Shown piece by piece: positions 4,197 to 64,000 of a stretch of 64,000 nucleotides of DNA. Numbering within the stretch: the first letter of the stretch is position 1; each line of letters begins with the position of its first letter. The stretch spans positions 308,017 to 372,016 of IMG/VR virus record IMGVR_UViG_3300042367_000228. One strand, 5' to 3'. The position numbers and the translations under genes were made by a program. A model generated the notes under the pieces. The model saw only the letters and a list, made by a program, of their open reading frames with translations. It did not search any database and was not told the origin of the DNA.

Positions 4197-4529
4197 TTAT
4201 GAATAGTCAGGTAACGGACCGCCGTATTTAGAACTTTTAATTGATTTACCGTCTAGTTTAACACGTTTTTTACCAATCTTTTGTGTTTTGCCAGTTTTAC
4301 GAGCCATAAATCCTTGTGCTTTACAACTCGATTCGTCACTTGCACCTTTTTTCTTATTACTTAAACATAATTCTTTACTAGCTTTGCCACGTTCGTCTAA
4401 TTGTGCGTCTGCTTTGACTTTGTATCTCGATTCAGTTGCATGCCCGCGTGCAGGACGATCGCTTGTGCGCCCTGGGCGTTTTGAACTAACACCCAATTTT
4501 TCTTCTTTAATAAACTCTTGAGCTCTCAT
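4197..4529 (-). CDS. basic hypothetical protein
   Basis: 110-aa ORF in operon; MRAQEFIKE leader. Confidence 0.7.
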   Translation of the reverse strand: MRAQEFIKEEKLGVSSKRPGRTSDRPARGHATESRYKVKADAQLDERGKASKELCLSNKKKGASDESSCKAQGFMARKTGKTQKIGKKRVKLDGKSIKSSKYGGPLPDYS

Positions 4530-8508: not shown

Positions 8509-8719
8509 GAATTACATACGTAGTCCACTTCCCTTCTTTAAATGAAAATCTAATATAGTCAGTTAGCGGAACATTGAACTCGTCATATTCCGCTACTGCT
8601 ACTAAATCAAAATCAAAATCTACACCAACTTGTAAATTTTTAGATCGCAAATCATCTATAATATCTATAAAGCTAGATAACGGAATTTCTAGATTAGCAA
8701 TGTGTTCAAAATGATTCAT
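8495..8719 (-). CDS. hypothetical protein
   Basis: 74-aa ORF coupled to thioesterase gene. Confidence 0.55.
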   Translation of the reverse strand: MNHFEHIANLEIPLSSFIDIIDDLRSKNLQVGVDFDFDLVAVAEYDEFNVPLTDYIRFSFKEGKWTTYVILKFG

Positions 8720-9065
8720 TTAACTCGCGTTTATTACCGTTCTTATCAATACTAACAAATGTAATGTTAGTACTGAATGCATGTTCTCTTGGATTTGATC
8801 TGTCATCGCAATAAACATCAATTTTAAATGTAACTGATGATTTACCTTTGTGTGTAAGTACTGCATCGAATTCTAAAATAGAACCAGCTGGTACACGTTT
8901 AGTAAACGATACACTGTCTAATCCGCGTGTAACAAACTCGTGTCCCGGAAAGGCATAGTTAGCAGATACATAGCCAACAGAGTCAATCCAATGGAGCATG
9001 GTTCCTCCGAATAAAAATCCGTAATGATTAAGATGACTTGTTAAAACTAATTTGTGATGTTTCAT
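8706..9065 (-). CDS. acyl-CoA thioesterase, hotdog fold (YciA-like)
   Basis: LNHYGFLFGGTMLHWID, V.F...V..G, G.SSV, TFVSID. Confidence 0.85.
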   Translation of the reverse strand: MKHHKLVLTSHLNHYGFLFGGTMLHWIDSVGYVSANYAFPGHEFVTRGLDSVSFTKRVPAGSILEFDAVLTHKGKSSVTFKIDVYCDDRSNPREHAFSTNITFVSIDKNGNKRELNESF

Positions 9066-9098: not shown

Positions 9099-9821
9099 AT
9101 GAAGATTGAAGAACTATTAAGTGAAATAAAATTTAAACCACGTATAACAAATAAATCTACTAGTGGTGTAATACAGTCACCTAAACTTAAATATATAGCA
9201 AACGGCTGCCAGGCAATCGCTTACTATCATAAAACACATCCTAATACAGTAGTTAAAGTAGCTGCAGTATCAGGTGAAACTGATCCACTATGGCAATTTT
9301 TAAGGATTTGCATTAATCATCCTAACAATCCTTATTTCCCAAAAGTATTTAATCATAAAATCTTTAATTTAAAAACAATTACTCCTGAAGAGGAAGAGTA
9401 TTTAGAAACACTTCCAGAATTTGAATATTTGCCTATATACGATAATATGAAAATGCAAATAGTAATGGTAACTGAACACCTTAAAGAAATCACTCCAGCT
9501 GAGTTTGATTCAGCATTGCATAATATCGGACTAACTCCGTTATTAAATTCAGCTAAAAAAGTGTTACAACCTAAAAGTAGATTTCCGTTATCACCTGAAC
9601 TACTTTGGGGTAAGCTAATGGATAACGAAAACGGTCGTAAGTACCTACGAAAACATTCAAAAGATAAACATTTTAGTGACGCAATACGACTATTAAGTCC
9701 GTTGCTTGCAACAGGTAAAATGTATGCTGATGTCCACTTAGGTAATATAATGTTACGCAATGATGGACATCTAGTGTTTAACGATCCGTTAGCAGTTATA
9801 TCTACTGGTCATAATTCTTAA
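9099..9821 (+). CDS. putative protein kinase-like protein
   Basis: ANGCQA..Y / VVKV; DVHLGNIM...VFNDP resembles the T7 gp0.7-type catalytic loop. Confidence 0.6.
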   Translation: MKIEELLSEIKFKPRITNKSTSGVIQSPKLKYIANGCQAIAYYHKTHPNTVVKVAAVSGETDPLWQFLRICINHPNNPYFPKVFNHKIFNLKTITPEEEEYLETLPEFEYLPIYDNMKMQIVMVTEHLKEITPAEFDSALHNIGLTPLLNSAKKVLQPKSRFPLSPELLWGKLMDNENGRKYLRKHSKDKHFSDAIRLLSPLLATGKMYADVHLGNIMLRNDGHLVFNDPLAVISTGHNS

Positions 9822-11274: not shown

Positions 11275-11532
11275 ATGAAATTTGAAACAGCTCCAATCCA
11301 AAATCAAATTCAATGCAGATCCTATGATGAAGCCAAAATGTATCTAATGTTCTTAGAAATAGACGGCAAACGAGGATGGCGCATGCCTACGCGATACGAA
11401 CGCACTAAATATTTTAGAGTAGGTCAACATGTTAATGAACCTGTATGGGATCTTCTAGATGAAGACACAGTTTTATTAAATAATAAAACACGACGATTAA
11501 TACCAGTAAGAGACAGAAACGATGACAATTGA
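11275..11532 (+). CDS. DUF1566/Lcl-like C-type-lectin-fold mini protein
   Basis: YDEA.MY...IDGKRGWRMPT..E...PVRD. Confidence 0.8.
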   Translation: MKFETAPIQNQIQCRSYDEAKMYLMFLEIDGKRGWRMPTRYERTKYFRVGQHVNEPVWDLLDEDTVLLNNKTRRLIPVRDRNDDN

Positions 11533-11755
11533 GATATCACCAAAGGAATACTGGAAAGAAATGTGCCGAGACGAAGCACAGCTGTATTGTTTGTTCTTAG
11601 ATATAGACGGTAAAAGAGGGTGGCGATTTCCTAAGTCTGATGAATTAAGTCACCATATCATGTGGTATAAAGAAGATTTAAACAATCCTGATTTAGGTGA
11701 TCCTGACGATTTGTACCCCATAGTACCAGTACGAGATAGAAAAGATGACGATTGA
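11522..11755 (+). CDS. DUF1566/Lcl-like mini protein
   Basis: EA.LYC...DGKRGWRFP...E...PVRD. Confidence 0.8.
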   Translation: MTIEISPKEYWKEMCRDEAQLYCLFLDIDGKRGWRFPKSDELSHHIMWYKEDLNNPDLGDPDDLYPIVPVRDRKDDD

Positions 11756-11999
11756 AATATCACCAATAGGTACCTGGAAGAAACCACTTCCTAAAGATCA
11801 AGCACAGCTTTATTGTATGTTCTTTGAACATGACGGCAGAGGATGGAGATTCCCAACTGAAGAAGAATGCTTAACCGATATGCGCGGAATCCCAACAATT
11901 ATAGGATGGTGTTGGAACGCAGAACGTATAGAAAGTGCCGACTATGATACTGCAAAATGCGATGTAATTTTAGTTCGCGATGTAAAAAATGATAAATAA
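11745..11999 (+). CDS. DUF1566/Lcl-like mini protein
   Basis: A.LYC...GWRFPT.EE...LVRD. Confidence 0.8.
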   Translation: MTIEISPIGTWKKPLPKDQAQLYCMFFEHDGRGWRFPTEEECLTDMRGIPTIIGWCWNAERIESADYDTAKCDVILVRDVKNDK

Positions 12000-12293: not shown

Positions 12294-13181
12294 ATGAGAG
12301 CATACGAATTTATATTAAAAGAGCTATTAGAACCAAAGAAACCTGGATCAGCTGTTAAAAGTTCAACTGTATCCGTGTCTGGAGCACAAGGGAGTATTTC
12401 TAAAATCTCCCAACAAAAATTTACCACATCTAAAGGAAATGTAGTTAAGGTTTGGTTTAAGCCAACTCAAGCTGATGACGGTAATCCATCAGTTGAAATT
12501 ACGTTTTATGTTAACGACACTGTTTACGATAATTCATCAAGTGAAGGTAAGGATATTGCAAACGATTTTGAAATTTTATCAGGAGTTGGATATCTAGTTA
12601 ATAACACGCTTGACAGAAAGAAGCTTAATCATTGTACATTTTTAGCATACTCGAGCAACCGAGATACTCGAACTAAATTTAATATTCCACTTGAAAAATA
12701 CCTAGTTAAATTAAATCACTCGTTAACAACGTTTTATGATCAAATTGCAAATTTTAATCCTACTCCTGAACAACTATCTGCAGAGTTAGAAAGAAGGAAT
12801 GCATTACTAGCAAGACTTAAAAGACCTTTAGAAACGTCTGTTAATATGGTAGACCCTAACCTAACAAACGCATTATCTCAAATGCATGCGTTTATTAATC
12901 AACCATTTGACGAAACATCTTTAGAACGCTATTCTAAGTTACTTACTGCAATTGAACATTCTTCATCTCACTACGTATATAATAACACCGGTTTTCCTAA
13001 ATTAATTAACGATCTGCATGAATTTAAATTGATAGTAAGAAGTTATTCGAAAGACGGAGCTGAAATTACATCTAATCGTAGAGCGTCAGTATATTCAAAA
13101 TTAATACAAAAGTTCTTTTCAGATAAATGGGATATCAAAACACAAGGTGCTCACTTTACCTTAACCCGCAAACTATCTTAA
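12294..13181 (+). CDS. hypothetical protein
   Basis: start reassigned to MRAYEFILKE leader. Confidence 0.7.
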   Translation: MRAYEFILKELLEPKKPGSAVKSSTVSVSGAQGSISKISQQKFTTSKGNVVKVWFKPTQADDGNPSVEITFYVNDTVYDNSSSEGKDIANDFEILSGVGYLVNNTLDRKKLNHCTFLAYSSNRDTRTKFNIPLEKYLVKLNHSLTTFYDQIANFNPTPEQLSAELERRNALLARLKRPLETSVNMVDPNLTNALSQMHAFINQPFDETSLERYSKLLTAIEHSSSHYVYNNTGFPKLINDLHEFKLIVRSYSKDGAEITSNRRASVYSKLIQKFFSDKWDIKTQGAHFTLTRKLS

Positions 13182-13582: not shown

Positions 13583-13633
13583 AGGCCCCGCTGTAGCATA
13601 TACACGAATAAATAATACTTGTGGAGATATACA

Positions 13634-14524
13634 ATGAGAGCAAGAGAATTTATTGTTGAAGCGGTTAAGCTATCTATTAAAAGTATAGTACCGCCAACAG
13701 ACATTAGTCAAGAAGACAAACAACAGGCATTTGCTAACCTTAGTCAAACTGAAATTGATCAATTAGATCAGCCTAGATACATTTCAAAAGAAATGTGGCC
13801 TCAGTTCCGCAAATGGCTGGTGCAACGCAGTTTAGCAAGTAACCCTACACTTGATCCAGTTCTTACTGCATATACCCCGGGTGAAACTCTTGCTCTCTTT
13901 AAACATCCTGAGATTGCTAAATGGCATCAAGAGATTGTTCATTACAAAGTTCCTCCTGAATACAAAATGGTAGCATTTGTTCCTTGTGGCAAAACTAAAC
14001 CCTGGGCCAATGCAGCACGCGGCATTTACAAAAGCTACAATCAAATCATAAAAGACAAAAGATATCCGGTATACTTTGTAACGGTATCTGAACCACTAGG
14101 AATTGTTCCAAGTAGTCTTTGGAGTGATTTCCCTCAATACGATAATCCGGGTTTATTTAAAGATGATACTCAGCAATCCGGAGGATTGTTTACAGCTGAT
14201 TGGAAACAGTACTATGGTACAGGTAAACAGAAAATGCCATTTGATCCGGCAGCCTATTCTCAGTGTATCCAATTTTTAGGTAATATCATTAATCAGTTTA
14301 TTGAAAACAATCCGCAAGTTCAATATGTTAGTTTTGTTGAAGATAAGATGTTTAAGGCTAGTTCTAACAATGTTGGAACACATAGTGCAATGCTCTCCCA
14401 TACCAATAAAATAGATCCTGCGCATCGTTACCTGAAACGAGCCGCACCACGTGAAGAACCATATAACTATGTGGATCAATCTCTTTCAACTCATTTCGAT
14501 AAACCGGAATCCGATCAACCATAA
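13634..14524 (+). CDS. DUF5591-like (ArcS archaeosine-synthase core-like) protein
   Basis: FVPCGKTKPW and VTVSEPLGIVP...FPQYDNPG match the PC..KP / SP.G.VP..YD.P pattern. Confidence 0.6.
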   Translation: MRAREFIVEAVKLSIKSIVPPTDISQEDKQQAFANLSQTEIDQLDQPRYISKEMWPQFRKWLVQRSLASNPTLDPVLTAYTPGETLALFKHPEIAKWHQEIVHYKVPPEYKMVAFVPCGKTKPWANAARGIYKSYNQIIKDKRYPVYFVTVSEPLGIVPSSLWSDFPQYDNPGLFKDDTQQSGGLFTADWKQYYGTGKQKMPFDPAAYSQCIQFLGNIINQFIENNPQVQYVSFVEDKMFKASSNNVGTHSAMLSHTNKIDPAHRYLKRAAPREEPYNYVDQSLSTHFDKPESDQP

Positions 14525-15065: not shown

Positions 15066-15284
15066 ATGATTGAACTAGCACCACTATCTGATTATAAGAT
15101 GTCATACGACAAAGCCTGGTTGTATTGTGCTACCTTGACCTATAAGAACAAATACGATTGGCGTATTCCGACTGATGCCGAGTTTACATATAACGAAGAA
15201 ATTGATGAAGAATCTTTTGATCAATCAGACGAACCACATCATAGCCATTGGCGTGTTCAACCAGTGAGGACTAAAGATGCTTGA
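15066..15284 (+). CDS. DUF1566/Lcl-like mini protein
   Basis: MIELAP..YDKAWLYC..KYDWRIPT..E...PVRT. Confidence 0.85.
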   Translation: MIELAPLSDYKMSYDKAWLYCATLTYKNKYDWRIPTDAEFTYNEEIDEESFDQSDEPHHSHWRVQPVRTKDA

Positions 15285-15501
15285 GTTTGCCCCAATGCCG
15301 GCCGGCCGGTTCTCATTTGATGATGCCTGGTTATATTGTGCTACACTAACATATAATAACAATTATGACTGGCGCATACCAACTGAAGATGAATTTTGCA
15401 ACTACGAAGAAATTGATTGCGATGCGTTTGATCAGAATGATGAAGGTCTTAAGATAGCTAAAGTAACACATAAAATCTGTCCAGTGCGCACTGCTGATTA
15501 A
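15277..15501 (+). CDS. DUF1566/Lcl-like mini protein
   Basis: family motif; close paralog of 15066. Confidence 0.85.
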   Translation: MLEFAPMPAGRFSFDDAWLYCATLTYNNNYDWRIPTEDEFCNYEEIDCDAFDQNDEGLKIAKVTHKICPVRTAD

Positions 15502-15560
15502 AATACCATTTGTAAAGTCCTAAGTTTTGCGCTATAATAATGTTTTATGTAAGGAGCCAT

Positions 15561-15851
15561 ATGCTAGTAGCCACTTGTCAATCAAAATTTATAACGTATG
15601 CCGAAGCTGTTATGTATTGTTTGTTTTTAGATCACCAAGGAAAGAAAGGCTGGCGGTTGCCAACTTTACTTGAATGGGCAGATACTGCAGATGGCAGACT
15701 TACAACTAATACATGGTATCGAGAGAGTACGAATGAAGAACGAGCATTGCTTGCAAAACAATACAAACATACCCAGCAAGCTATAGAAGCTATGATTGAA
15801 CCATATGAAAATCGTAAAACAGGTATAGCAGTTGCAGTGAGGGATGAATGA
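15561..15851 (+). CDS. DUF1566/Lcl-like mini protein
   Basis: EAVMYC..GKKGWRLPT; start after AGGAG. Confidence 0.8.
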   Translation: MLVATCQSKFITYAEAVMYCLFLDHQGKKGWRLPTLLEWADTADGRLTTNTWYRESTNEERALLAKQYKHTQQAIEAMIEPYENRKTGIAVAVRDE

Positions 15852-16075
15852 TAGAAATATTAGCTAACCCACCTGGGATCAGTCGGAAGTTATATAATCG
15901 CGATGCAGCCTTTTTGTATATAATTACTCTAGTCCATAATGGACATGCAGACTGGCGATTTCCTACTCCAGACGAATGGGTTAACAGTCCTTTAGCGTAT
16001 ATGGCATGGCATCAAGGAAGAATTGATGACGATAGATTTTTCAGCTATCACATATACCCAGTGAGAGATATATGA
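15848..16075 (+). CDS. DUF1566/Lcl-like mini protein
   Basis: DWRFPT.DE...PVRD. Confidence 0.8.
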   Translation: MIEILANPPGISRKLYNRDAAFLYIITLVHNGHADWRFPTPDEWVNSPLAYMAWHQGRIDDDRFFSYHIYPVRDI

Positions 16076-16266
16076 TTAGATTTGCTAAACCATCCGGATG
16101 GTTAAACAACACAACTCCGGAAGCTGCTGACATGCACGTATTGTTTTATGAAGAAGACGGTTTAAAATACTGGAGGAGAGCAACTAACGAAGATTTTATT
16201 GACTTTGCAATACACGTTCCTGAATCATTGTTATCTAATACATGTATTCCGGTAAAGGATTTATGA
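16072..16266 (+). CDS. divergent DUF1566/Lcl-like mini protein
   Basis: EDG..YWR.AT.ED...PVKD. Confidence 0.65.
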   Translation: MIRFAKPSGWLNNTTPEAADMHVLFYEEDGLKYWRRATNEDFIDFAIHVPESLLSNTCIPVKDL

Positions 16267-16484
16267 GTATGCTTGAATTAGCCCCGCCATCAGAAAAAAT
16301 GACATATGACGAAGCAATTATGTATTGCTTTTGGTTAGAACACGATGGAAAGAAAGGCTGGAGAATGCCAACACATGAAGAATGGGCAAAGACTAAAGGC
16401 ATCATGGTGTACACTTGGAGACAGAATGATCACCGTACGATGATGGATACGATGCCTGTAGTACCGGTAAGAGGACAATTATGA
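16263..16484 (+). CDS. DUF1566/Lcl-like mini protein
   Basis: YDEAIMYC..GKKGWRMPT. Confidence 0.85.
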   Translation: MSMLELAPPSEKMTYDEAIMYCFWLEHDGKKGWRMPTHEEWAKTKGIMVYTWRQNDHRTMMDTMPVVPVRGQL

Positions 16485-16894
16485 AATGGTTTAACCGAAT
16501 ATTCAATCGCAATGTATATTTAAAATTTGACGTACCTACAAACCCTCCAGACAACAACAGAGTGCGTTATGTTGTAGGAGTCCCGGTTAATCACTATGAG
16601 AAAAAAATCATTGAAATCGTTTATACTGGAATACTATGTTCCAGTGATGATGAAGCAACGATGCATTTGTTTATGATGAGTAAGCATGATGGAAAGAGAG
16701 GATGGCGACTACCTACAATACACGAAGCTATATACTGTTCAGAGCTATCAGTAGTTAAGCATTTCTCTGATTGGAATTCACTTAGAGTTCCATTAGAATT
16801 AGTTTTAGTAAGAGATGTTACAGAAGATGAGTATAACTATTACAATGGACCTATAACACGTTTCTTTAAGCAGTTTGCGCAGTGGACTTATTGA
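16481..16894 (+). CDS. DUF1566/Lcl-like protein with N- and C-terminal extensions
   Basis: DEA.M...DGKRGWRLPT..E...LVRD. Confidence 0.75.
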   Translation: MKWFNRIFNRNVYLKFDVPTNPPDNNRVRYVVGVPVNHYEKKIIEIVYTGILCSSDDEATMHLFMMSKHDGKRGWRLPTIHEAIYCSELSVVKHFSDWNSLRVPLELVLVRDVTEDEYNYYNGPITRFFKQFAQWTY

Positions 16895-16925
16895 TAGCTA
16901 AATAGCAGACAATAAGGAGAGTGTT

Positions 16926-17909
16926 ATGTCAAAAGAAGAAGTAGGTACAGGTGTAAGCCAAGAAGAGTCAGTTACGCTTAATGGCGTAACAGTAACAGAA
17001 GAATCACATGCTGATGTATATGCTGAAGCACACGCAGGTGCAAGTGCAGAAGTAACTGATACAAGTGTATCGGCAGAAGCACACGCAGGTGCAAGTGTTG
17101 GTGCAGAAGCCGGTGCAAGTGTTACTTTAGGTGATGTTACATTAGAAGCTGAAGCACACGCTACTGCTGAAGTTGAAGCCACTGCTAACGCAAATGCAGG
17201 ATGGACAGGTACAGATGTAGTAGCTGAAGCAAGCGCAGGTGTTGAAGCGCGTGCAGAAATTGGTGCAAGTGCATCAGTTGGTAATGAAGATGTTGGCACA
17301 GTTAGTGTTTCGAGTGGTGCATACGCAGAAGCTAATGCAGGTGTTGAAGTAAGTGGTTCAGTTGGATTACACGGCGCACAAGGATATGCCGGAGCATCAG
17401 TTGGTGCAAGTGTTGGTGTAGAAGCTAATGCAGTAGCAGAAAGCCATGGTGTGTCTGCTGAAGCAGGTGCAGGTGTTAGCATTGGATTACAAGCAGGTGC
17501 AGAAGTTGGCGGTAAAGCTGAAGTACATGGCAACACTATTAGCATCGGTGTAGAAGGTGAACTAGAGTTATTAGCAGGTGTAGAACTTAATGCTGAATTA
17601 TCAGTTGATACTACTCCAGTTGTAGAATTAGCAGAACAAGTAGCCGATGACACTGCAAAGCTAGCAGAGCAAGCAGCGTTAGAAGCAGCCCGCATTGCTC
17701 AAGCAAAAGCAGAATACGCTGCTCGCGTTGCCCAAGAAGAAGCAGAACACGCAGCTAGAGAAGCACGAGAAGCATCAGAAAGAGCAGCTAGAGAAACACA
17801 AGCCGCAGCTGAAAGTGCAGCTAGAGAAGCAGATCGTTTAGCTAGAGAAGCAGCCAATCGTGCAGCAAATGAGATGAATAAAGCATTTAAAAAAGTAAAG
17901 TTCTGGTAA
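16926..17909 (+). CDS. Ala/Gly/Val/Glu-rich repeat protein with C-terminal coiled coil
   Basis: AEAHAGAS/GASVG repeats; AAREA heptads; AGGAG RBS; TAAATA upstream. Confidence 0.75.
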   Translation: MSKEEVGTGVSQEESVTLNGVTVTEESHADVYAEAHAGASAEVTDTSVSAEAHAGASVGAEAGASVTLGDVTLEAEAHATAEVEATANANAGWTGTDVVAEASAGVEARAEIGASASVGNEDVGTVSVSSGAYAEANAGVEVSGSVGLHGAQGYAGASVGASVGVEANAVAESHGVSAEAGAGVSIGLQAGAEVGGKAEVHGNTISIGVEGELELLAGVELNAELSVDTTPVVELAEQVADDTAKLAEQAALEAARIAQAKAEYAARVAQEEAEHAAREAREASERAARETQAAAESAAREADRLAREAANRAANEMNKAFKKVKFW

Positions 17910-19689: not shown

Positions 19690-20394
19690 GTGTTTCTTTT
19701 ACTATCAACTAGCAACATCAAAACACAAAAAGGTGTTAAATTAGGATATGCTACTTATGTCTTACACTTATCACCATCTGATCTCAGTGGTGTTATCAAC
19801 ACTTGCCCAAAAGCAACACTAGGTTGCAAAATAGGTTGCCTAAACACTTCAGGTCACGGCGGCATGTACACTGACATTGAAGACAGTGTAGTTCAACAAG
19901 CTCGCATACGCAAAACAAAATGGTTTGCTACAGGACGCGACAGTTTCTTAGAAGCTCTAGTAGTTGACATCAAACGCGCAATTAAACAAGCTACAAAGAA
20001 AGGTCTTATTCCTGTATTTCGCCTCAATGGCACAAGTGATCTCTCATGGGAGAAATACAAAATTAACGGTATGAATATCTTTGAACTATTTCCAACTGTT
20101 CAATTCTACGACTACACTAAGGTGTTGCATCGTAAAGTTGGACACATCCATAACTATCATTTAACATTCTCTAGAGGCGAGTCTAATCAAGCAGAAGTTG
20201 ATTATGCTATTGCTAACGGTATGAATGTTGCTTATGTATTTGATAAAACTCCAGCGACATACGATGGTATGACTGTATTTGATGGCGACGACACTGACTT
20301 ACGATTCCTTGATCCGACAGGTGTAATTGTAGGTCTTAAGGCAAAAGGTCGCGCACGTAAAGACACTAGTGGATTTGTAATTAGAACAAAATAG
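19690..20394 (+). CDS. GP88-family protein (CxxxxxxCxxxC)
   Basis: TCPKATLGCKIGCL, FRLNGTSD, FYDYTK, YHLTFS, DGD.TDLRFLDP, GLKAKG. Confidence 0.75.
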   Translation: MFLLLSTSNIKTQKGVKLGYATYVLHLSPSDLSGVINTCPKATLGCKIGCLNTSGHGGMYTDIEDSVVQQARIRKTKWFATGRDSFLEALVVDIKRAIKQATKKGLIPVFRLNGTSDLSWEKYKINGMNIFELFPTVQFYDYTKVLHRKVGHIHNYHLTFSRGESNQAEVDYAIANGMNVAYVFDKTPATYDGMTVFDGDDTDLRFLDPTGVIVGLKAKGRARKDTSGFVIRTK

Positions 20395-37549: not shown

Positions 37550-37595
37550 AGTTTTAAAACTAAATAGATTACAAGATTGTAACAGAATATTTAAT

Positions 37596-37667
37596 CCGTT
37601 CTTAGCATAAAGGTAATGCCAGGTCCTCATAAGACCCACTATCTCAGTTCGACCCTGAGGGAACGGA
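37596..37667 (+). tRNA. tRNA-CAT (Met or Ile2)
   Basis: cloverleaf: CCGTTCT/GGAACGG, loop CT-CAT-AA, CTCAG-TTCGACC-CTGAG; no encoded CCA. Confidence 0.85.
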
Positions 37668-37707
37668 TTAAATGTTTTGTAATAATACAGTTAACAACCA
37701 TTTTTAT

Positions 37708-39839: not shown

Positions 39840-39916
39840 CTGCCTATAGCTCAAATGGACAGAGCGTTCCCCTCCTAAGGGAAAGGCTATGGGTTCAAGT
39901 CCCGTTAGGCAGGCCA
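39840..39916 (+). tRNA. tRNA-Arg(CCT)
   Basis: CTGCCTA/TAGGCAG, CT-CCT-AA loop, GGTTCAAGTCC, CCA. Confidence 0.92.
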
Positions 39917-60962: not shown

Positions 60963-61148
60963 ATGCAAAATACTAAACAACAACAAGTTACACGTTTTTT
61001 AAACAAACAAGCGCAAGCACACAAACAACAATACAGCACTGCGGCACAAACGGGCTTTATGGATCACGTAGTAACAGCTTTGGAGTTTATGATTGTTGCG
61101 GTTCCGTTTGCTATTGCAATAGTTGGATTTTGCGGTGCATTTAATTAA
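60963..61148 (+). CDS. small membrane protein
   Basis: promoter + hairpin; C-terminal TM helix. Confidence 0.6.
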   Translation: MQNTKQQQVTRFLNKQAQAHKQQYSTAAQTGFMDHVVTALEFMIVAVPFAIAIVGFCGAFN

Positions 61149-61667
61149 TAAAAAACGCTTGCAATTTAAAATAACAAGCGTATAATATAAAGCGTGTTAA
61201 GCAATAACGTTTAACACGCGCTTTTTAACAATTTAACTATAGTGTGTATATTATGCAAACAATAACAGCTACGTGCAAACAAGCACAAAAAAACAGTAAT
61301 AACGCAATGCAACAAGCAATGCTGCAAGTGCTTAATGCTTATGTTGCAACAAACAAAGTAACAGCAACAAAGCAAAAACACGCTAAAAAAGTAACTTACA
61401 CAGCAAATAAAAACTATGTTTTATGCTATGTAACACGCGCTTTTGTTGCAAATATTTGTTTTGCAAGTGCTAACAGTGTAAGTTATACGCTAACACTTGC
61501 GCAAAATGCTAACTTAACGCAAGCAAATATTAACAATGCTTACATTAAGTGTGTAACTAAAAAAACGTTTAACAAGTATGTTAACAAAGTTAAAAACACT
61601 GTAATTAACTAAGCAATAAATAATGCAAGCACTTTTTACAGTGCTTGCATTTTAACACTACAAATAG
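61136..61667. other. GR-free island (no GA, GG, TC, CC)
   Basis: line-by-line inspection of ~530 bp. Confidence 0.9.
61253..61612 (+). CDS. 119-aa protein lacking D, E, G, P and W, inside GR-free island
   Basis: promoter 61159-61186, hairpin leader, stem-loop after stop. Confidence 0.6.
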   Translation: MQTITATCKQAQKNSNNAMQQAMLQVLNAYVATNKVTATKQKHAKKVTYTANKNYVLCYVTRAFVANICFASANSVSYTLTLAQNANLTQANINNAYIKCVTKKTFNKYVNKVKNTVIN

Positions 61668-62789
61668 GAGTAACGACAATGGCAAGACGATCAGACCGAG
61701 CAACTACAGCAAACAAAAAAGCAGTTCGTCGAGTACTAAGACGTAACAAGAAGTAGTAAATAGGCCCCGCTGTAGCATTACATGATATTGAAACGTATGG
61801 CACACATTGACCCCGCTGTACGGATACCTTAACTAACATTTCTATCTACCATACCTAATACACACGCTCCACTTAACCCTGTATGTGCCGCATAACACAT
61901 ATGGGGTTTCCTTTTGATCGATCCATCAAACATAACGGCATTCCGGTCATTGGAGACTCTTGGAGGTTTGGTATTCGATAAACTAACTATACTTGACTAT
62001 TCGAAATGCCATATGCTATAATACCCCGCTGTAACATAGCACGTTTTAGTATATGCGTGTAACACTTACACAATATTAAAACAATATATGTAAAATTTAC
62101 GTTTTAACGCATGTACACAGCACGTTTATACACTAAGCAATACAGCTATAGCACTATACACAATAAAACAGCTTACACGCAAATTTTGCGCTAGTTAGTA
62201 TGGATTGTATGATATTCCATATAGAGGAATCACCATGCTATATCAATACCCCGCTGTAAGGTTACACGGTTAAACACATACTTGCATTTTATACGTTTAC
62301 TTGCTATAATATATTTTTTTAACTTACTTACTATAACAACAATGCTAACACAAAAATTATATATGTATAACATGTCCAGCGCAACCAAATTGCGTGTAAT
62401 GATGACACACGGTGATGCAGCCGCTAGACTAATCACAAAGGTTAAACGAGTTAAAGGATATCAGGCCCCGCTGTAGGATCGTGTGGGCAGGCTAGGATTG
62501 AACAGGCATCTGGTTAGGTGCCTGATACACACAAACTATGCAACCGGAATGCCGATAGCTTTTATTATATCTAAACCGATATGTCGATGAAGGTACAGTG
62601 GAACGGATTGGTAGGTGCATGGATGGTATTAGAATGGAACGATTTGACATCGAATGGTTGACATCGGTACCGGCCGTTATGGTGTATACGATTACGGTAC
62701 GAATTAAGTGTGTGTTTTATTATGCACTGTTTTGGTGCTATAAAACAAAATAAAAAAGTGCAACCCTTTCGAGTTGCACTCATTTGGTG

Positions 62790-63041: not shown

Positions 63042-63473
63042 TTAGCCGAAAATACCGTCTTTTTCTACAATATCCAAGTCTACCAATTCGCCTTCACTTT
63101 GTGCAATCGCTGATTGACTATGTGAGTTAATGAATGTATTTAGTGCATTCAAGTGATTTTCAGTAAACCCGTTGATTCTTTTTTGTGCATCGCAAATATC
63201 TTTGTATTCGTCATAGTTATTGCGTAAAAATAGTGCCGCTGTCAATTCAGATACAGCACGGTTTAATTGCACCATGAACACTTCAGAATGTGCATGAACA
63301 CCACTTTCTTTCACCTTATTTAAGTGCAACCAACGTGCTTTACAAGTTAAACCGTCGCCCGAAAAACGTGCTTTGTAGCCTAGACGATGATGCAAGCTAA
63401 CACCCACACCTTGCACTACTTTTGCGCCATTGCCGAAAGTGTTTGTTGTTGTTTGTTGTGCAAAATTTGACAT
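63042..63473 (-). CDS. hypothetical protein
   Basis: 143 aa; AGGTG RBS; divergent from GR-free region. Confidence 0.65.
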   Translation of the reverse strand: MSNFAQQTTTNTFGNGAKVVQGVGVSLHHRLGYKARFSGDGLTCKARWLHLNKVKESGVHAHSEVFMVQLNRAVSELTAALFLRNNYDEYKDICDAQKRINGFTENHLNALNTFINSHSQSAIAQSEGELVDLDIVEKDGIFG

Positions 63474-63481
63474 AATATCAC

Positions 63482-64000
63482 CTATTTAAAGTATGTTATG
63501 CGCTTTTTTTGTGCATACTTAATGCACAATAAATGCGCGTTAAAAGTAAAGTAAAAATAAATTGTTAAAAAGCTAACTTAAAAATGCGTTTTTTTATGCG
63601 CTTGTTTTTTTAAGTTGTGCATAGTTTACAGCATATAAAAAAAAAGTAAAATTTAATTGCAATTTATTTTTACAATTTAGCACTAAAAATGCGCATTTTT
63701 AAAAAAAGTGTATAAAAAACAATAACTTATAATTTAAAAATAATTTTATTTAATGCGCATTTTTTGCGCATAATGCGCATTTATAGCGTTTTTAATGCGC
63801 ATTTTTAGTGCTATATATTGCAAGCGCATAGCAAGCGCATAGCAAGCGCATAGCACAGGCCCCGCTGTTAGCGCATAGCAAGCGCATAGCATAGCAAGCG
63901 CATAGCATAGCAAGCGCATAGCATAGCAAGCGCATAGCATAGCAAGCGCATAGCATAGCAAGCGCATAGCATAGCAAGCGCATAGCATAGCAAGCGCATA
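63482..64000. other. GR-free non-coding island broken only by the GGCCCC motif
   Basis: no GA/GG/TC/CC in 63482-63857 and 63864-64000. Confidence 0.9.
63820..64000. repeat. GCAAGCGCATA / 16-bp tandem repeat running off the window end
   Basis: 3 x 11-bp units, then 8 copies at 16-bp period (GCAAGCGCATA-GCATA). Confidence 0.95.

What the first reader, a model, noticed from the sequence alone, without database searches (positions are those of the whole stretch)
13634..14524. DUF5591/ArcS-like gene points to 7-deazaguanine chemistry
Seen: PCGKTKPW and VSEPLGIVP..YDNPG motifs. Established: archaeosine synthase ArcS carries this core and some phages make 7-deazaguanine DNA modifications using ArcS/QueF-like/Gat-QueC with DpdA. 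Inference: may be part of a G-modification pathway, which would fit the GR-free islands; it could instead act on tRNA. No dpdA/folE/queC/queD/queE is seen in this window.
Basis: partly seen in the sequence, partly recalled or inferred. Interest (0 to 1): 0.6.

Follow-up and report, generated by a model that had tools for sequence, protein, structure and literature searches.

The report
Phage ArcS-core enzyme with capsid-targeting leader
A freshwater jumbo phage encodes a stand-alone copy of the catalytic core of archaeosine synthase that seems to be packed into the virion, and its genome holds a 7-deazaguanine DNA-modification gene set elsewhere, but no evidence makes this enzyme a fixed step of that pathway.

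Summary
Window 13634-14524 (+) is a real 296-aa gene with both quoted motifs. It passes Pfam DUF5591 (27.9 bits, cut-off 26). Its AlphaFold model (pLDDT 92.9) matches best the one solved ArcS-core structure, 2q07/AF0587 (Z 11.4), which the tested Vibrio phage nt-1 ArcS2 also hits by sequence (3e-8).

The 372-kb genome, outside the window, encodes FolE, QueD, QueE, a DpdL homologue (LxxxHRHxF) and a 573-aa protein that Pfam misses. That protein has a TGT fold and the motifs GDSGGFQ and YDCASPF..NGQ, so it is a DpdA-like transglycosylase. There is no QueC or QueF.

The DUF5591 gene is not tied to this set. It lies about 130-170 kb away. Its family occurs in four near-complete phage genomes that have none of these genes. 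PA5oct-like phages have the set without it. DpdL chemistry would leave no nitrile for ArcS-type chemistry.

Unexpectedly, the protein starts MRAREFIVE|A, like the T4 capsid-targeting sequence MKTYQEFIAE|A. Twelve genes share this leader (0.24 expected), and the phage has an S77 prohead protease. In other phages the module sits inside giant ORFs.

Best reading: a virion-packaged, ejected ArcS-core enzyme whose substrate is unproven.

The parts
13623..13626 (+). Shine-Dalgarno GGAG, 7 nt before the ATG
   Evidence: Read directly from the sequence.
13634..14524 (+). Gene for the 296-aa stand-alone DUF5591 / ArcS-core protein (P0001), stop codon included
13634..13660 (+). N-terminal leader MRAREFIVE (residues 1-9). 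It looks like a T4-type capsid-targeting sequence, with a predicted prohead-protease cut after Glu9.
   Evidence: T4 IPII/IPIII start MKTYQEFIAE|A. Twelve G000 ORFs share the leader against 0.24 expected. Leaderless homologues start exactly after it, at MKKTIKSV. The first 10 residues of the model have low pLDDT.
13661..13912 (+). Family-specific helical N-terminal module (residues 10-93) with invariant E40, W55, R59 and the AYTPxET motif (79-85)
   Evidence: Alignment A1 and model secondary structure. NCBIfam ArcS alpha aligns from residue 75.
13913..14506 (+). DUF5591 / ArcS C1-like alpha/beta core (residues 94-291)
   Evidence: Pfam match over residues 94-170. Structural match to 2q07 over residues 95-291, Z 11.4.
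13982..14005 (+). PCGKTKPW loop, the PC-X3-KP[YW] part of the ArcS signature, with the invariant candidate nucleophile Cys118
   Evidence: Invariant P117, C118, K122, P123, W124. It aligns with LPCTARKPY of AF0587 and LCTTTRPY of nt-1 ArcS2.
14084..14152 (+). VSEPLGIVP...FPQYDNPG block, the second conserved active-site region
   Evidence: Invariant S152, E153, P154, L155, V158, P159, W163, F166, P167, Y169, P172, G173. AF0587 has ISSPLVVPREFELLYPAVNYDTP at the same place.
12294..13181 (+). Upstream neighbour (295 aa, no family hit) with the same kind of leader, MRAYEFILKE
9099..9821 (+). 240-aa gene with leader MKIEELLSE, another putative capsid-targeted protein in this gene neighbourhood
4197..4529 (-). 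110-aa gene with leader MRAQEFIKE, another putative capsid-targeted protein

Best explanation
The gene encodes a stand-alone ArcS-core (DUF5591) enzyme. It belongs to a distinct, tightly conserved and mostly viral family. Shown: the fold, the Cys-x3-Lys-Pro-aromatic loop and the S-x-P-L..VP..YD.P block are those of the ArcS catalytic core. Inferred: like ArcS/ArcS2, it binds a C7-substituted 7-deazaguanine carried on a (deoxy)ribose 5'-phosphate. It would attack the C7 nitrile with Cys118 and pass the thioimidate intermediate to an amine or to water. Shown: the protein begins with a 9-residue leader, MRAREFIVE|A, like the T4 capsid-targeting sequence. Eleven other genes of this phage carry the same leader, and the genome encodes a T4-type S77 prohead protease, a scaffold-like protein and a Gp23-like capsid protein. 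Inferred: the protein is loaded into the prohead core, trimmed after Glu9, kept in the head with the DNA and ejected into the cell, as T4 internal proteins are. It would therefore act at the very start of infection, or on DNA at packaging. Shown: the phage has its own 7-deazaguanine DNA cassette (FolE, QueD, QueE, DpdL, TGT-fold DpdA-like), but this gene is neither linked to it nor co-distributed with it. Inferred: it is an accessory cargo enzyme and not a step of that pathway. Its likeliest substrate is a preQ0-type base in nucleic acid or nucleotide of the infected cell, made with the host's QueC or sitting in host tRNA or DNA.
For: Family and fold. 2q07 is a genuine ArcS core, because the tested nt-1 ArcS2 hits it at 3.3e-8 over LPCTARKPYLTSRTH. 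hhalign of the family against nt-1 ArcS2 gives 90% probability.

ArcS chemistry and substrate: preQ0 nucleoside 5'-monophosphate is the minimal ArcS substrate (PMC11298593). nt-1 ArcS2 makes dG+ from dPreQ0 DNA (PMC10516641).

Leader: T4 IPII/IPIII N-termini. Twelve G000 ORFs match against 0.24 expected, with a maximum of 2 in 200 trials, and 1 of 1513 internal Met sites matches. In homologues the leader ends [ILVF]xE just before the conserved (T/S)IKS(V/I), and leaderless members start MKKTIKSV. The S77 protease, scaffold-like protein and Gp23-like capsid protein lie at C1:84919-87849, and their N-termini carry LxE sites. The capsid-targeting concept and gp21 processing are described in PMC9026906, PMC3012670 and PMC10229621.

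Independent hints of delivery with the DNA: the module sits inside giant ORFs of 2243, 825, 536 and 417 aa in other phages. One homologue is fused to ART-PolyVal. In G006-type phages the gene lies beside the head genes.

Cassette.

Uncoupling from the cassette.
Against: No biochemical, proteomic or expression data exist for any member of this family. The Ser and His of the ArcS signature PC-X3-KPY-X2-S-X2-H are Ala and Gly here, so the chemistry may differ. Only the first half of the Pfam profile matches. The leader could be a shared N-terminal helix with another role. Its resemblance to the T4 sequence is short, and cleavage has not been observed. The giant ORFs carry no other recognisable domain, so calling them polyvalent or ejected proteins is conjecture. 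Members on bacterial-looking contigs (L010/L011, and a 1.69-Mb contig) have no leader and cannot be virion cargo, so the core function must also make sense inside a cell. In fragment G002 the gene lies 4.3 kb from QueD, a hint of linkage that this reading treats as chance.
Confidence: 0.4

Rival explanations
1. One reading: an ArcS2-type tailoring enzyme of the phage's own DNA modification. The DpdA-like transglycosylase would insert preQ0, made from phage CDG by the host's QueC, and P0001 would convert dPreQ0 in DNA into dG+ or a related amidine, amide or acid.
For: Remote but real homology to nt-1 ArcS2, which does exactly this. A TGT-fold DpdA-like gene plus FolE, QueD and QueE are present in the same genome. 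The three closest relatives carrying the gene (G000, G002, G006) all have the cassette. In G002 the gene is 4.3 kb from QueD. A capsid-targeted enzyme could act on DNA as it is packaged.
Against: No QueC, QueF or Gat-QueC in the genome. The DpdL homologue with the LxxxHRHxF motif predicts decarboxylation of CDG to 7-deazaguanine, which has no C7 group to modify. The gene is about 160 kb from the DpdA-like/DpdL/FolE/QueE genes and 129 kb from QueD, whereas nt-1 arcS2 sits inside its que cluster. Four near-complete phage genomes carry the family with no FolE, QueD, QueC, QueF, TGT or DpdA-like gene. The DpdA-like family has more than 7,600 members and the DUF5591 family 269. PA5oct-like phages have the cassette and modified G but no homologue.
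Confidence: 0.25
2. A tRNA-modifying enzyme. It would act on a 7-deazaguanine precursor in host or phage tRNA, as archaeal ArcS does, to tune translation or to protect GUN-anticodon tRNAs.
For: The founding function of the fold is on tRNA. The phage encodes 7 tRNAs including tRNA-Tyr(GTA), a queuosine-family substrate. All 7 cellular genomes carrying the family have a TGT, including CPR genomes without QueC. A CCA-adding-enzyme gene lies within about 10 kb in two unrelated loci.
Against: No PUA or other RNA-binding domain is present. Bacterial tRNA carries preQ1 or Q, not the nitrile preQ0. TGT is near-universal, so its presence says nothing. No neighbour is conserved across 38 loci.
Confidence: 0.12
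3. The ArcS-core fold is reused here for a substrate unrelated to 7-deazaguanine. Examples would be another modified base, a nucleotide signal or a host defence factor, with the protein serving as an ejected anti-defence effector.
For: Ser and His of the ArcS signature are lost and only half of the Pfam profile matches. There is a family-specific N-terminal module with its own invariant motifs, LSxxExxQLG and AYTPGET. The family's distribution is independent of any deazaguanine gene in phages. One homologue is fused to an ADP-ribosyltransferase of polyvalent proteins. T4 internal proteins are anti-restriction factors (PMC3012670).
Against: The Cys-x3-Lys-Pro-aromatic loop and the second block are invariant and superimpose on the ArcS core. 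No other function has ever been shown for this fold. The host can supply deazaguanine substrates without any phage genes.
Confidence: 0.2
4. Not a functional gene: a chance ORF or a decaying remnant.
For: None found.
Against: It has a good RBS and 269 full-length homologues with 38 invariant columns at 42-94% identity. The fold is confidently predicted. The stretch recurs in at least 19 further lake-water metagenomes.
Confidence: 0.02

Closest known systems
ArcS2 of Vibrio phage nt-1 (VPFG_00169), the phage stand-alone ArcS core that turns dPreQ0 in DNA into dG+ (Hutinet et al. 2023, PMC10516641)
   Same: Both are stand-alone DUF5591 cores without a TGT-like N domain or PUA. Both have the Cys-x3-[KR]-P-[YW] loop and the ..P..[FW]...[YF]P..YD.. 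block. Both are phage-encoded, in genomes that also hold FolE, QueD, QueE and a DNA transglycosylase.
   Different: The relationship is only remote: hhalign 90% over 98 columns at 20% identity, and phmmer is not significant. Ours is 70 aa longer, with a family-specific N-terminal module and a capsid-targeting-like leader. nt-1 arcS2 lies inside the que/dpdA2 cluster next to QueC, while ours is unlinked and the genome has no QueC. Ours has Ala where the signature has Ser.
Archaeosine synthase ArcS (alpha subunit) of Euryarchaeota, and AF0587 (PDB 2q07)
   Same: The C1 catalytic-core fold is shared (Z 11.4, 133 residues) along with the PC-X3-KP[YW] loop. The only NCBIfam hits are the ArcS alpha models.
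   Different: There is no TGT-like N domain, C2 or PUA domain, and no RaSEA partner was found (the only radical-SAM hit in the genome is QueE). Scores are far below the equivalog cut-offs (33 against 600 bits). Ser and His of the signature are absent. The setting is viral or bacterial, not archaeal tRNA.
T4 internal proteins IPI, IPII, IPIII and Alt, which are capsid-targeted, gp21-processed, ejected cargo
   Same: A short N-terminal leader of the same pattern (T4 MKTYQEFIAE|A, here MRAREFIVE|A). The genome has an S77 prohead protease and a Gp23-like capsid protein. Several otherwise unrelated genes share only the leader, and four of them lie in this window.
   Different: There is no sequence similarity beyond the leader. 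T4 IPs are small basic proteins or an ADP-ribosyltransferase, and none is an ArcS-like enzyme. Packaging and cleavage have not been observed here.
The phiST / PA5oct type of 7-deazaguanine DNA modification cassette (FolE, QueD, QueE, DpdL, DpdA3 or another DpdA)
   Same: The genome carries FolE, QueD (CxxxHGH), QueE, DpdL (LxxxHRHxF) and a TGT-fold protein next to the DNA polymerase gene, as in Cellulophaga phage phiST/phi19:2. FolE (58%) and the DpdA-like protein (38%) are closest to those of the PA5oct-like jumbo phages, whose DNA has a modified G.
   Different: The transglycosylase is neither DpdA1-4 nor detectable with PF01702 or PF20314. It is 573 aa long and belongs to a very large unannotated family. 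None of the described cassettes includes a member of the P0001 family.

Membership tests
Pfam DUF5591 (PF17884), the ArcS C1 core | Score above the family's gathering threshold | tested here: met
   27.9 bits against 26, E 2.4e-6. Only profile positions 1-74 of 150 match. The six-frame genome search gives the same result.
Pfam DUF5591 (PF17884), the ArcS C1 core | Fold of the solved representative (2q07 / AF0587) | tested here: met
   VIA-align Z 11.4, rmsd 3.3 A, 133 residues, model residues 95-291, with the next hit at Z 6.4. Foldseek also ranks 2q07 first, but weakly (E 3e-3). 2q07 is tied to ArcS2 by sequence.
Canonical archaeosine synthase ArcS (alpha) | Four-domain architecture: TGT-like N domain, C1, C2, PUA | tested here: not met
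   The protein is 296 aa with no TGT or PUA hit in Pfam. NCBIfam ArcS models score 33 and 27.5 bits against cut-offs of 600 and 440.
Canonical archaeosine synthase ArcS (alpha) | Signature PC-X3-KPY-X2-S-X2-H | tested here: inconclusive
   Here it reads PC-GKT-KPW-AN-A-AR-G. P, C, K, P and the aromatic residue are invariant in the family, while Ser is replaced by Ala and His by Gly. The active nt-1 ArcS2 is also degenerate (LC-TTT-RPY-EN-S-RK-W).
Phage ArcS2 (dPreQ0 to dG+ in DNA) | Stand-alone C1 core encoded by a virus | tested here: met
   ESM Atlas places it in a cluster whose recorded taxa are all viral.
Phage ArcS2 (dPreQ0 to dG+ in DNA) | Genome supplies preQ0 (FolE, QueD, QueE and QueC) and a DpdA | tested here: not met
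   FolE, QueD, QueE and a DpdA-like protein are present. QueC is absent by the PF06508 six-frame search and by phmmer with nt-1 QueC. DpdL is present instead.
Phage ArcS2 (dPreQ0 to dG+ in DNA) | Gene linked to, or co-distributed with, the deazaguanine genes | tested here: not met
   The gene is 129-170 kb from the cassette genes. Four near-complete family-bearing phage genomes have none of these genes. No neighbour is conserved across 38 loci. The one exception is G002, where it lies 4.3 kb from QueD.
Phage ArcS2 (dPreQ0 to dG+ in DNA) | Amidinotransferase activity on dPreQ0-DNA | not testable with these tools
   This needs expression together with a preQ0-inserting DpdA, followed by LC-MS/MS of deoxynucleosides.
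T4-type capsid-targeted internal (ejected) proteins | N-terminal leader of about 10 residues ending [IL]xE, resembling the T4 capsid-targeting sequence | tested here: met
   MRAREFIVE|A compared with T4 MKTYQEFIAE|A. The leader class is enriched about 50-fold at gene starts in this genome.
T4-type capsid-targeted internal (ejected) proteins | Genome encodes a gp21-family (Peptidase_S77) prohead protease and a Gp23-type capsid | tested here: met
   phmmer with the Pfam-annotated S77 and Gp23 proteins of L007 gives C1:87223-87849 (1.7e-73) and C1:84919-86091 (1.5e-181).
T4-type capsid-targeted internal (ejected) proteins | Protein found in virions with the leader removed | not testable with these tools
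   No cultured phage carries the gene. Virion proteomics is needed.
DpdA / TGT superfamily (for the 573-aa protein at C1:159261-160979, outside the window) | TGT TIM-barrel fold with the two catalytic Asp motifs | tested here: met
   All of the top 50 Foldseek PDB hits are TGTs (E 7e-7, probability 1.00, TM about 0.51 by target; model pLDDT 71). GDSGGFQ and SYDCASPFLATANGQ are invariant in 23 homologues. Reading these as the TGT motifs rests on my own knowledge of TGT sequences.
DpdA / TGT superfamily (for the 573-aa protein at C1:159261-160979, outside the window) | Recognised by the PF01702 (TGT) or PF20314 (DpdA4) models, or similar to DpdA2 or DpdA3 | tested here: not met
   No hit at E up to 10. 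phmmer against nt-1 DpdA2 and phi19:2 DpdA3 is not significant. hhalign is weak but puts the motifs in register (E 0.004 and 0.03).

The most novel reading that the evidence does not exclude
An ArcS-core enzyme has been recruited as virion cargo. It is either capsid-targeted by a T4-like leader or embedded in giant ejected proteins, and it enters the cell with the DNA. There it rewrites a 7-deazaguanine base in host nucleic acid, for example preQ0/Q-pathway tRNA or dPreQ0 in Dpd-modified host DNA, as an immediate-early takeover or anti-defence act. This would be the first ejected nucleic-acid base-tailoring enzyme of this kind, and it would work independently of the phage's own DNA modification pathway.
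Probability: 0.15. Interest if true: 0.8.

Novelty: new variant of a known kind. Interest (0 to 1): 0.55.

Why it matters
Phage ArcS2 has been tested in a single case, Vibrio phage nt-1, and its role in STSV-2 is still unexplained. This work defines a separate, well-conserved, mostly viral branch of the same catalytic core. That branch is not tied to deazaguanine biosynthesis genes and carries marks of virion packaging. If it is an ejected enzyme, it widens the known repertoire of phage internal proteins from inhibitors and ADP-ribosyltransferases to base-tailoring chemistry.

The side result also has practical value. The standard TGT model misses a TGT-fold DpdA-like family with more than 7,600 metagenomic members. 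That family sits beside FolE, QueD and DpdL in jumbo phages. Surveys that use PF01702 as the signature of 7-deazaguanine DNA will therefore undercount such phages.

Tried and rejected
- **Known phages.** megablast and tblastn of the locus and the protein against 50,697 phage records found no match. No cultured relative carries the gene.
- **PHROGs.** Only a weak hit to an unnamed family.
- **PDB by sequence.** The family profile against PDB gave nothing relevant.
- **BFVD fold search.** One unnamed hit only.
- **Uracil-DNA-glycosylase fold.** I recalled this from an old COG description. A UDG appears only at Z 4.8, among unrelated Rossmann-like folds, so I dropped the idea.
- **PF01702 as the test for DpdA.** It was negative in G000 and in 23 related records. 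This was a false negative for the divergent DpdA-like family, so I repeated the co-occurrence test with that protein itself.
- **PF20314 (DpdA4).** Negative.
- **Conserved gene neighbours.** Across 38 family loci only clade-specific synteny and one chained multi-domain cluster turned up. A CDA-type deaminase domain follows the gene in G006-type phages only.
- **Window neighbours.** No informative family hits.
- **Domain content of the giant ORFs and of the other leader-bearing proteins.** Nothing beyond DUF5591, DUF6321 and sub-threshold hits.
- **Papers.** Phillips 2010 and 2012 on the ArcS motif are not held, so the roles of the Ser and His residues could not be checked. The supplements of Hutinet 2023 are not held.
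- **Tools left unused.** The big representative search, the complex prediction and read laying, because none would have changed the verdict.
Full report
**Setting.** The window is the last 64 kb (C1:308017-372016) of a 372,016-bp virus record with direct terminal repeats, rated complete. The same stretch recurs in lake-water and freshwater metagenomes from at least 19 further samples. No record in the 50,697-phage collection resembles the locus or the protein.

**Observation.** The ORF at 13634-14524 (+) gives a 296-aa protein. GGAG lies 7 nt upstream of the ATG. Both quoted motifs are present.
- Pfam DUF5591 is passed: 27.9 bits against 26, E 2.4e-6, residues 94-170, first half of the profile.
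- The only NCBIfam hits are the two ArcS alpha models, far below their cut-offs.
- The word-index search found 269 proteins of similar length.
- In an alignment of 48 of them, at 42-94% identity, 38 columns are invariant. These include P117, C118, K122, P123, W124, S152-E153-P154-L155, V158-P159, Y169, P172-G173-L174-F175, H250 and K268.

**Fold.** With that alignment AlphaFold2 gives pLDDT 92.9 and pTM 0.89. An exhaustive comparison with 48,161 PDB representatives returns one outlier, 2q07 (AF0587): Z 11.4, rmsd 3.3 A, 133 residues, model residues 95-291. The next hit scores Z 6.4. 2q07 is an ArcS core: the experimentally tested ArcS2 of Vibrio phage nt-1 hits it by sequence at 3.3e-8, across LPCTARKPYLTSRTH, the published PC-X3-KPY-X2-S-X2-H signature. 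The P0001 family profile aligns to nt-1 ArcS2 at 90% probability. The chain from P0001 to the ArcS core to a validated phage enzyme is therefore sound, but the relationship is remote. The signature here reads PC-GKT-KPW-AN-A-AR-G, so the Ser and His are missing.

**The rest of the genome.** Six-frame family searches found three pathway genes.
- FolE lies at C1:153366-154043 (198 bits; NCBIfam equivalog 298 bits).
- A QueD-type PTPS with an intact CxxxHGH lies at C1:192907-193440.
- A radical-SAM protein at C1:151041-151883 has only QueE models as NCBIfam hits, all below threshold.

QueC, TGT (PF01702) and DpdA4 (PF20314) gave nothing. I then took the DpdL and DpdA3 proteins of Cellulophaga phage phi19:2 from their position in the published cassette and searched all ORFs with them. 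This found a DpdL homologue at C1:158367-158741 (E 3.5e-12). It carries LENIHRHIF, the published DpdL motif LxxxHRHxF.

Two genes further on, beside the family-B DNA polymerase, lies a 573-aa ORF (C1:159261-160979) containing GDSGGFQ and SYDCASPFLATANGQ. From my own knowledge of TGT sequences, these match the two catalytic-Asp motifs of tRNA-guanine transglycosylases. Pfam sees nothing in this protein, even at E 10. Its AF2 model (pLDDT 71, pTM 0.74) nevertheless matches TGT structures only: all of the top 50 hits, E 7e-7, TM about 0.51 by target. Both motifs are invariant in 23 homologues.

The gene is linked to FolE in four lineages:
- 6 kb away in G000;
- 4 kb away in G002;
- 2 kb away in G006, where QueD is also adjacent;
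- about 5 kb away in Vibrio phage 2.275.O.

A 364-aa and a 180-aa protein of unknown function travel with it in G000 and G006. The family has more than 7,600 members in the metagenome collection. Among cultured phages it occurs in the PA5oct-like Pseudomonas jumbo phages, Sinorhizobium phage Phosso and Vibrio phage 2.275.O. PA5oct DNA resists enzymes in a pattern that suggests a modified G in GA and/or GG (PMC12191111). PA5oct was also listed as having a deazaguanine synthesis and incorporation system (PMC7824862). The phage therefore very probably modifies its DNA with a 7-deazaguanine. By analogy with phiST, the DpdL homologue and the lack of QueC point to 2'-deoxy-7-deazaguanosine.

**Is the DUF5591 gene part of that pathway?** Several results say it is not a fixed part.
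- *Position.* It lies about 160-170 kb from the DpdA-like, DpdL, FolE and QueE genes and 129 kb from QueD. The nt-1 arcS2 gene sits between the PTPS-like and FolE genes, next to QueC.
- *Chemistry.* ArcS and ArcS2 act on the nitrile of preQ0. The phage encodes no QueC, and DpdL would remove the C7 carboxyl altogether.
- *Distribution.* The family was found in 24 IMG/VR loci, 23 of whose records could be searched. G012, G015, G016 and G017 are 81-100% complete. None of them has FolE, QueD, the DpdA-like protein or TGT, and none has QueC or QueF above the cut-off. Only the closest relatives, G002 and G006, share the cassette with G000.
- *The converse.* PA5oct-like phages have the cassette but no homologue, and the DpdA-like family is about 30 times larger.
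- *Neighbours.* No neighbour is conserved across 38 loci.
- *Cellular genomes.* The family is rare: 7 loci in 185,579 species. They are Bacteriovoracaceae, Bdellovibrionales, three CPR lineages, an Undinarchaeales MAG and a Desulfobacterales MAG. All 7 have a TGT and 4 have QueC. TGT is near-universal, so this decides nothing.

The one hint in the other direction is G002, where the gene lies 4.3 kb from QueD.

**An unexpected feature.** P0001 starts MRAREFIVE|AVKLSIKS. T4 IPII and IPIII start MKTYQEFIAE|A. That 10-residue stretch is the capsid-targeting sequence: it loads proteins into the prohead core and is then removed by the gp21 protease (PMC9026906, PMC3012670, PMC10229621).

Twelve ORFs of this genome begin with M[KR]x(1-3)[ED][FIL][ILV]x(1-2)E. 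Random N-termini of the same composition give 0.24 on average and at most 2 in 200 trials. Only 1 of 1513 internal Met sites matches. Four of the twelve lie in this window: 4197-4529 (-), 9099-9821 (+), 12294-13181 (+) and P0001 itself.

The genome encodes a Peptidase_S77 prohead protease, a scaffold-like protein and a Gp23-like capsid protein (C1:84919-87849). Their N-termini carry LxE|[AGS] sites. Within the DUF5591 family, most phage members carry such a leader. It ends [ILVF]xE immediately before the conserved (T/S)IKS(V/I). Other members start MKKTIKSV, exactly where the leader would be cut off, and some of these sit on contigs that look bacterial.

In the more distant phages the module is not a separate gene. 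It sits inside ORFs of 417, 536, 825 and 2,243 aa. One homologue is fused to an ADP-ribosyltransferase domain typical of polyvalent proteins. In G006-type phages the gene lies next to the head genes. These independent features all suggest a protein that travels in the virion and enters the cell with the DNA.

**Most likely mechanism.** The core fold, the invariant Cys loop, the leader class, the head protease, the cassette and the uncoupled distribution are shown. The rest is inferred:
- ArcS-type attack of Cys118 on a C7 nitrile of a 7-deazaguanine carried on a ribose 5'-phosphate, the minimal ArcS substrate (PMC11298593);
- packaging through the leader, and cleavage after Glu9;
- ejection and early action on a substrate that the infected cell supplies.

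I put 0.40 on this composite.

**Comparison and novelty.** The protein is a member of Pfam DUF5591. It is not a canonical ArcS. It meets the architectural definition of phage ArcS2, but not the contextual one: preQ0 supply and linkage are both missing. It is best filed as a new variant of a known kind. The DpdA-like family is a known kind of enzyme (the TGT/DpdA superfamily) that current profile models do not capture.

**Limits.** All functional statements rest on homology and context. There are no expression, proteomic or nucleoside data. The TGT-fold model is of moderate confidence. Absence of a gene from metagenomic viral records is only as good as their completeness estimates. The papers that define the roles of the ArcS signature residues could not be read.

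Noticed in passing
outside the window: G000 C1:151041-160991 and C1:192907-193440 (loci L048, L049): A 7-deazaguanine DNA-modification gene set: QueE, FolE, DpdL homologue, TGT-fold DpdA-like protein and QueD. HNH and GIY-YIG homing endonuclease genes are inserted between QueE and FolE and after FolE. A family-B DNA polymerase follows at C1:163728-166391.
   Followed up: yes
outside the window: G000 C1:159261-160979 (L048:15261-16979, minus strand): The 573-aa DpdA-like protein belongs to a family of more than 7,600 metagenomic proteins, mostly about 540 aa and 65-70% identical. It has no Pfam domain and no PDB hit by sequence, so PF01702-based surveys of deazaguanine DNA miss it.
   Followed up: partly
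outside the window: G000 C1:155473-156003 (minus strand): A purine-type phosphoribosyltransferase (Pfam Pribosyltran 2e-16; closest NCBIfam model is xanthine PRT) lies 1.4 kb from FolE. It could convert a 7-deazaguanine base into a nucleotide. That would be a pre-replicative route, unlike base exchange by DpdA.
   Followed up: no
outside the window: G000 C1:156415-157509 and C1:158741-159280; G006 locus L052:2721-3842 and 510-1112: A 364-aa and a 180-aa protein, neither with any family hit, travel with the DpdA-like gene in two distantly related jumbo phages. They are candidates for further steps of the modification.
   Followed up: partly
window 4197-4529 (-), 9099-9821 (+), 12294-13181 (+), 13634-14524 (+); eight more in G000: Twelve genes start with a leader of the type MK/R-x-x-E-[FIL]-[ILV]-x-E, like the T4 capsid-targeting sequence (0.24 expected by chance). 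Apart from P0001, only one has a family hit above threshold (DUF6321). This looks like a set of internal or ejected proteins.
   Followed up: partly
window 61104-61691 and 63469-63860; shorter ones between 56154 and 62216: These stretches have no GA or GG on either strand (533-587 bp and about 380 bp; the longest in 50 shuffles is 117 bp). The first includes an ORF starting at ATG 61254 written entirely without GA, GG, TC or CC. PA5oct, which has the related DpdA-like gene, is reported to carry a modified G in GA and/or GG. These islands may therefore be kept free of the modification target.
   Followed up: partly
window 11275-11999 and 15066-16894 (+): Two tandem arrays hold about ten small paralogous genes (64-137 aa) that share the motifs DGK[RK]GWR[LFM]PT and PVRD. 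There is only a sub-threshold hit to the FGE-sulfatase domain (E 0.004). The DUF5591 gene lies between the two arrays.
   Followed up: no
window 16898-17909, both strands: Two long overlapping ORFs lie on opposite strands in an Ala/Glu/Gly/Val-rich low-complexity stretch, with GC skew +0.20. The + strand ORF (327 aa) ends in a coiled-coil-like AEAAR repeat.
   Followed up: no
window 37595-37668 and 39840-39916 (+); outside the window C1:231402-233622 and C1:242596-243017: tRNA-Met(CAT) and tRNA-Arg(CCT) lie in the window. Elsewhere there are five more tRNAs, including tRNA-Tyr(GTA), and a tmRNA-like gene (ARAGORN).
   Followed up: no
outside the window: G000 C1:257038-257844 (minus strand): A leader-bearing 268-aa protein has sub-threshold hits to a putative metallopeptidase family and to QueH (epoxyqueuosine reductase; 18 bits, cut-off 23.5). 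This is probably noise but is recorded because of the pathway.
   Followed up: no
locus L062:10615-17346 (G016, a 74-kb complete viral record); L029:9875-12349; L027:9971-11578: The DUF5591 module is embedded in giant ORFs (2,243, 825 and 536 aa) whose other parts match no Pfam family.
   Followed up: partly
window 19690-20394 (+) and 8706-9065 (-): A GP88-family protein (E 1.6e-43) and a 4HBT hot-dog thioesterase (E 4.5e-10) are the only nearby genes with family hits.
   Followed up: no
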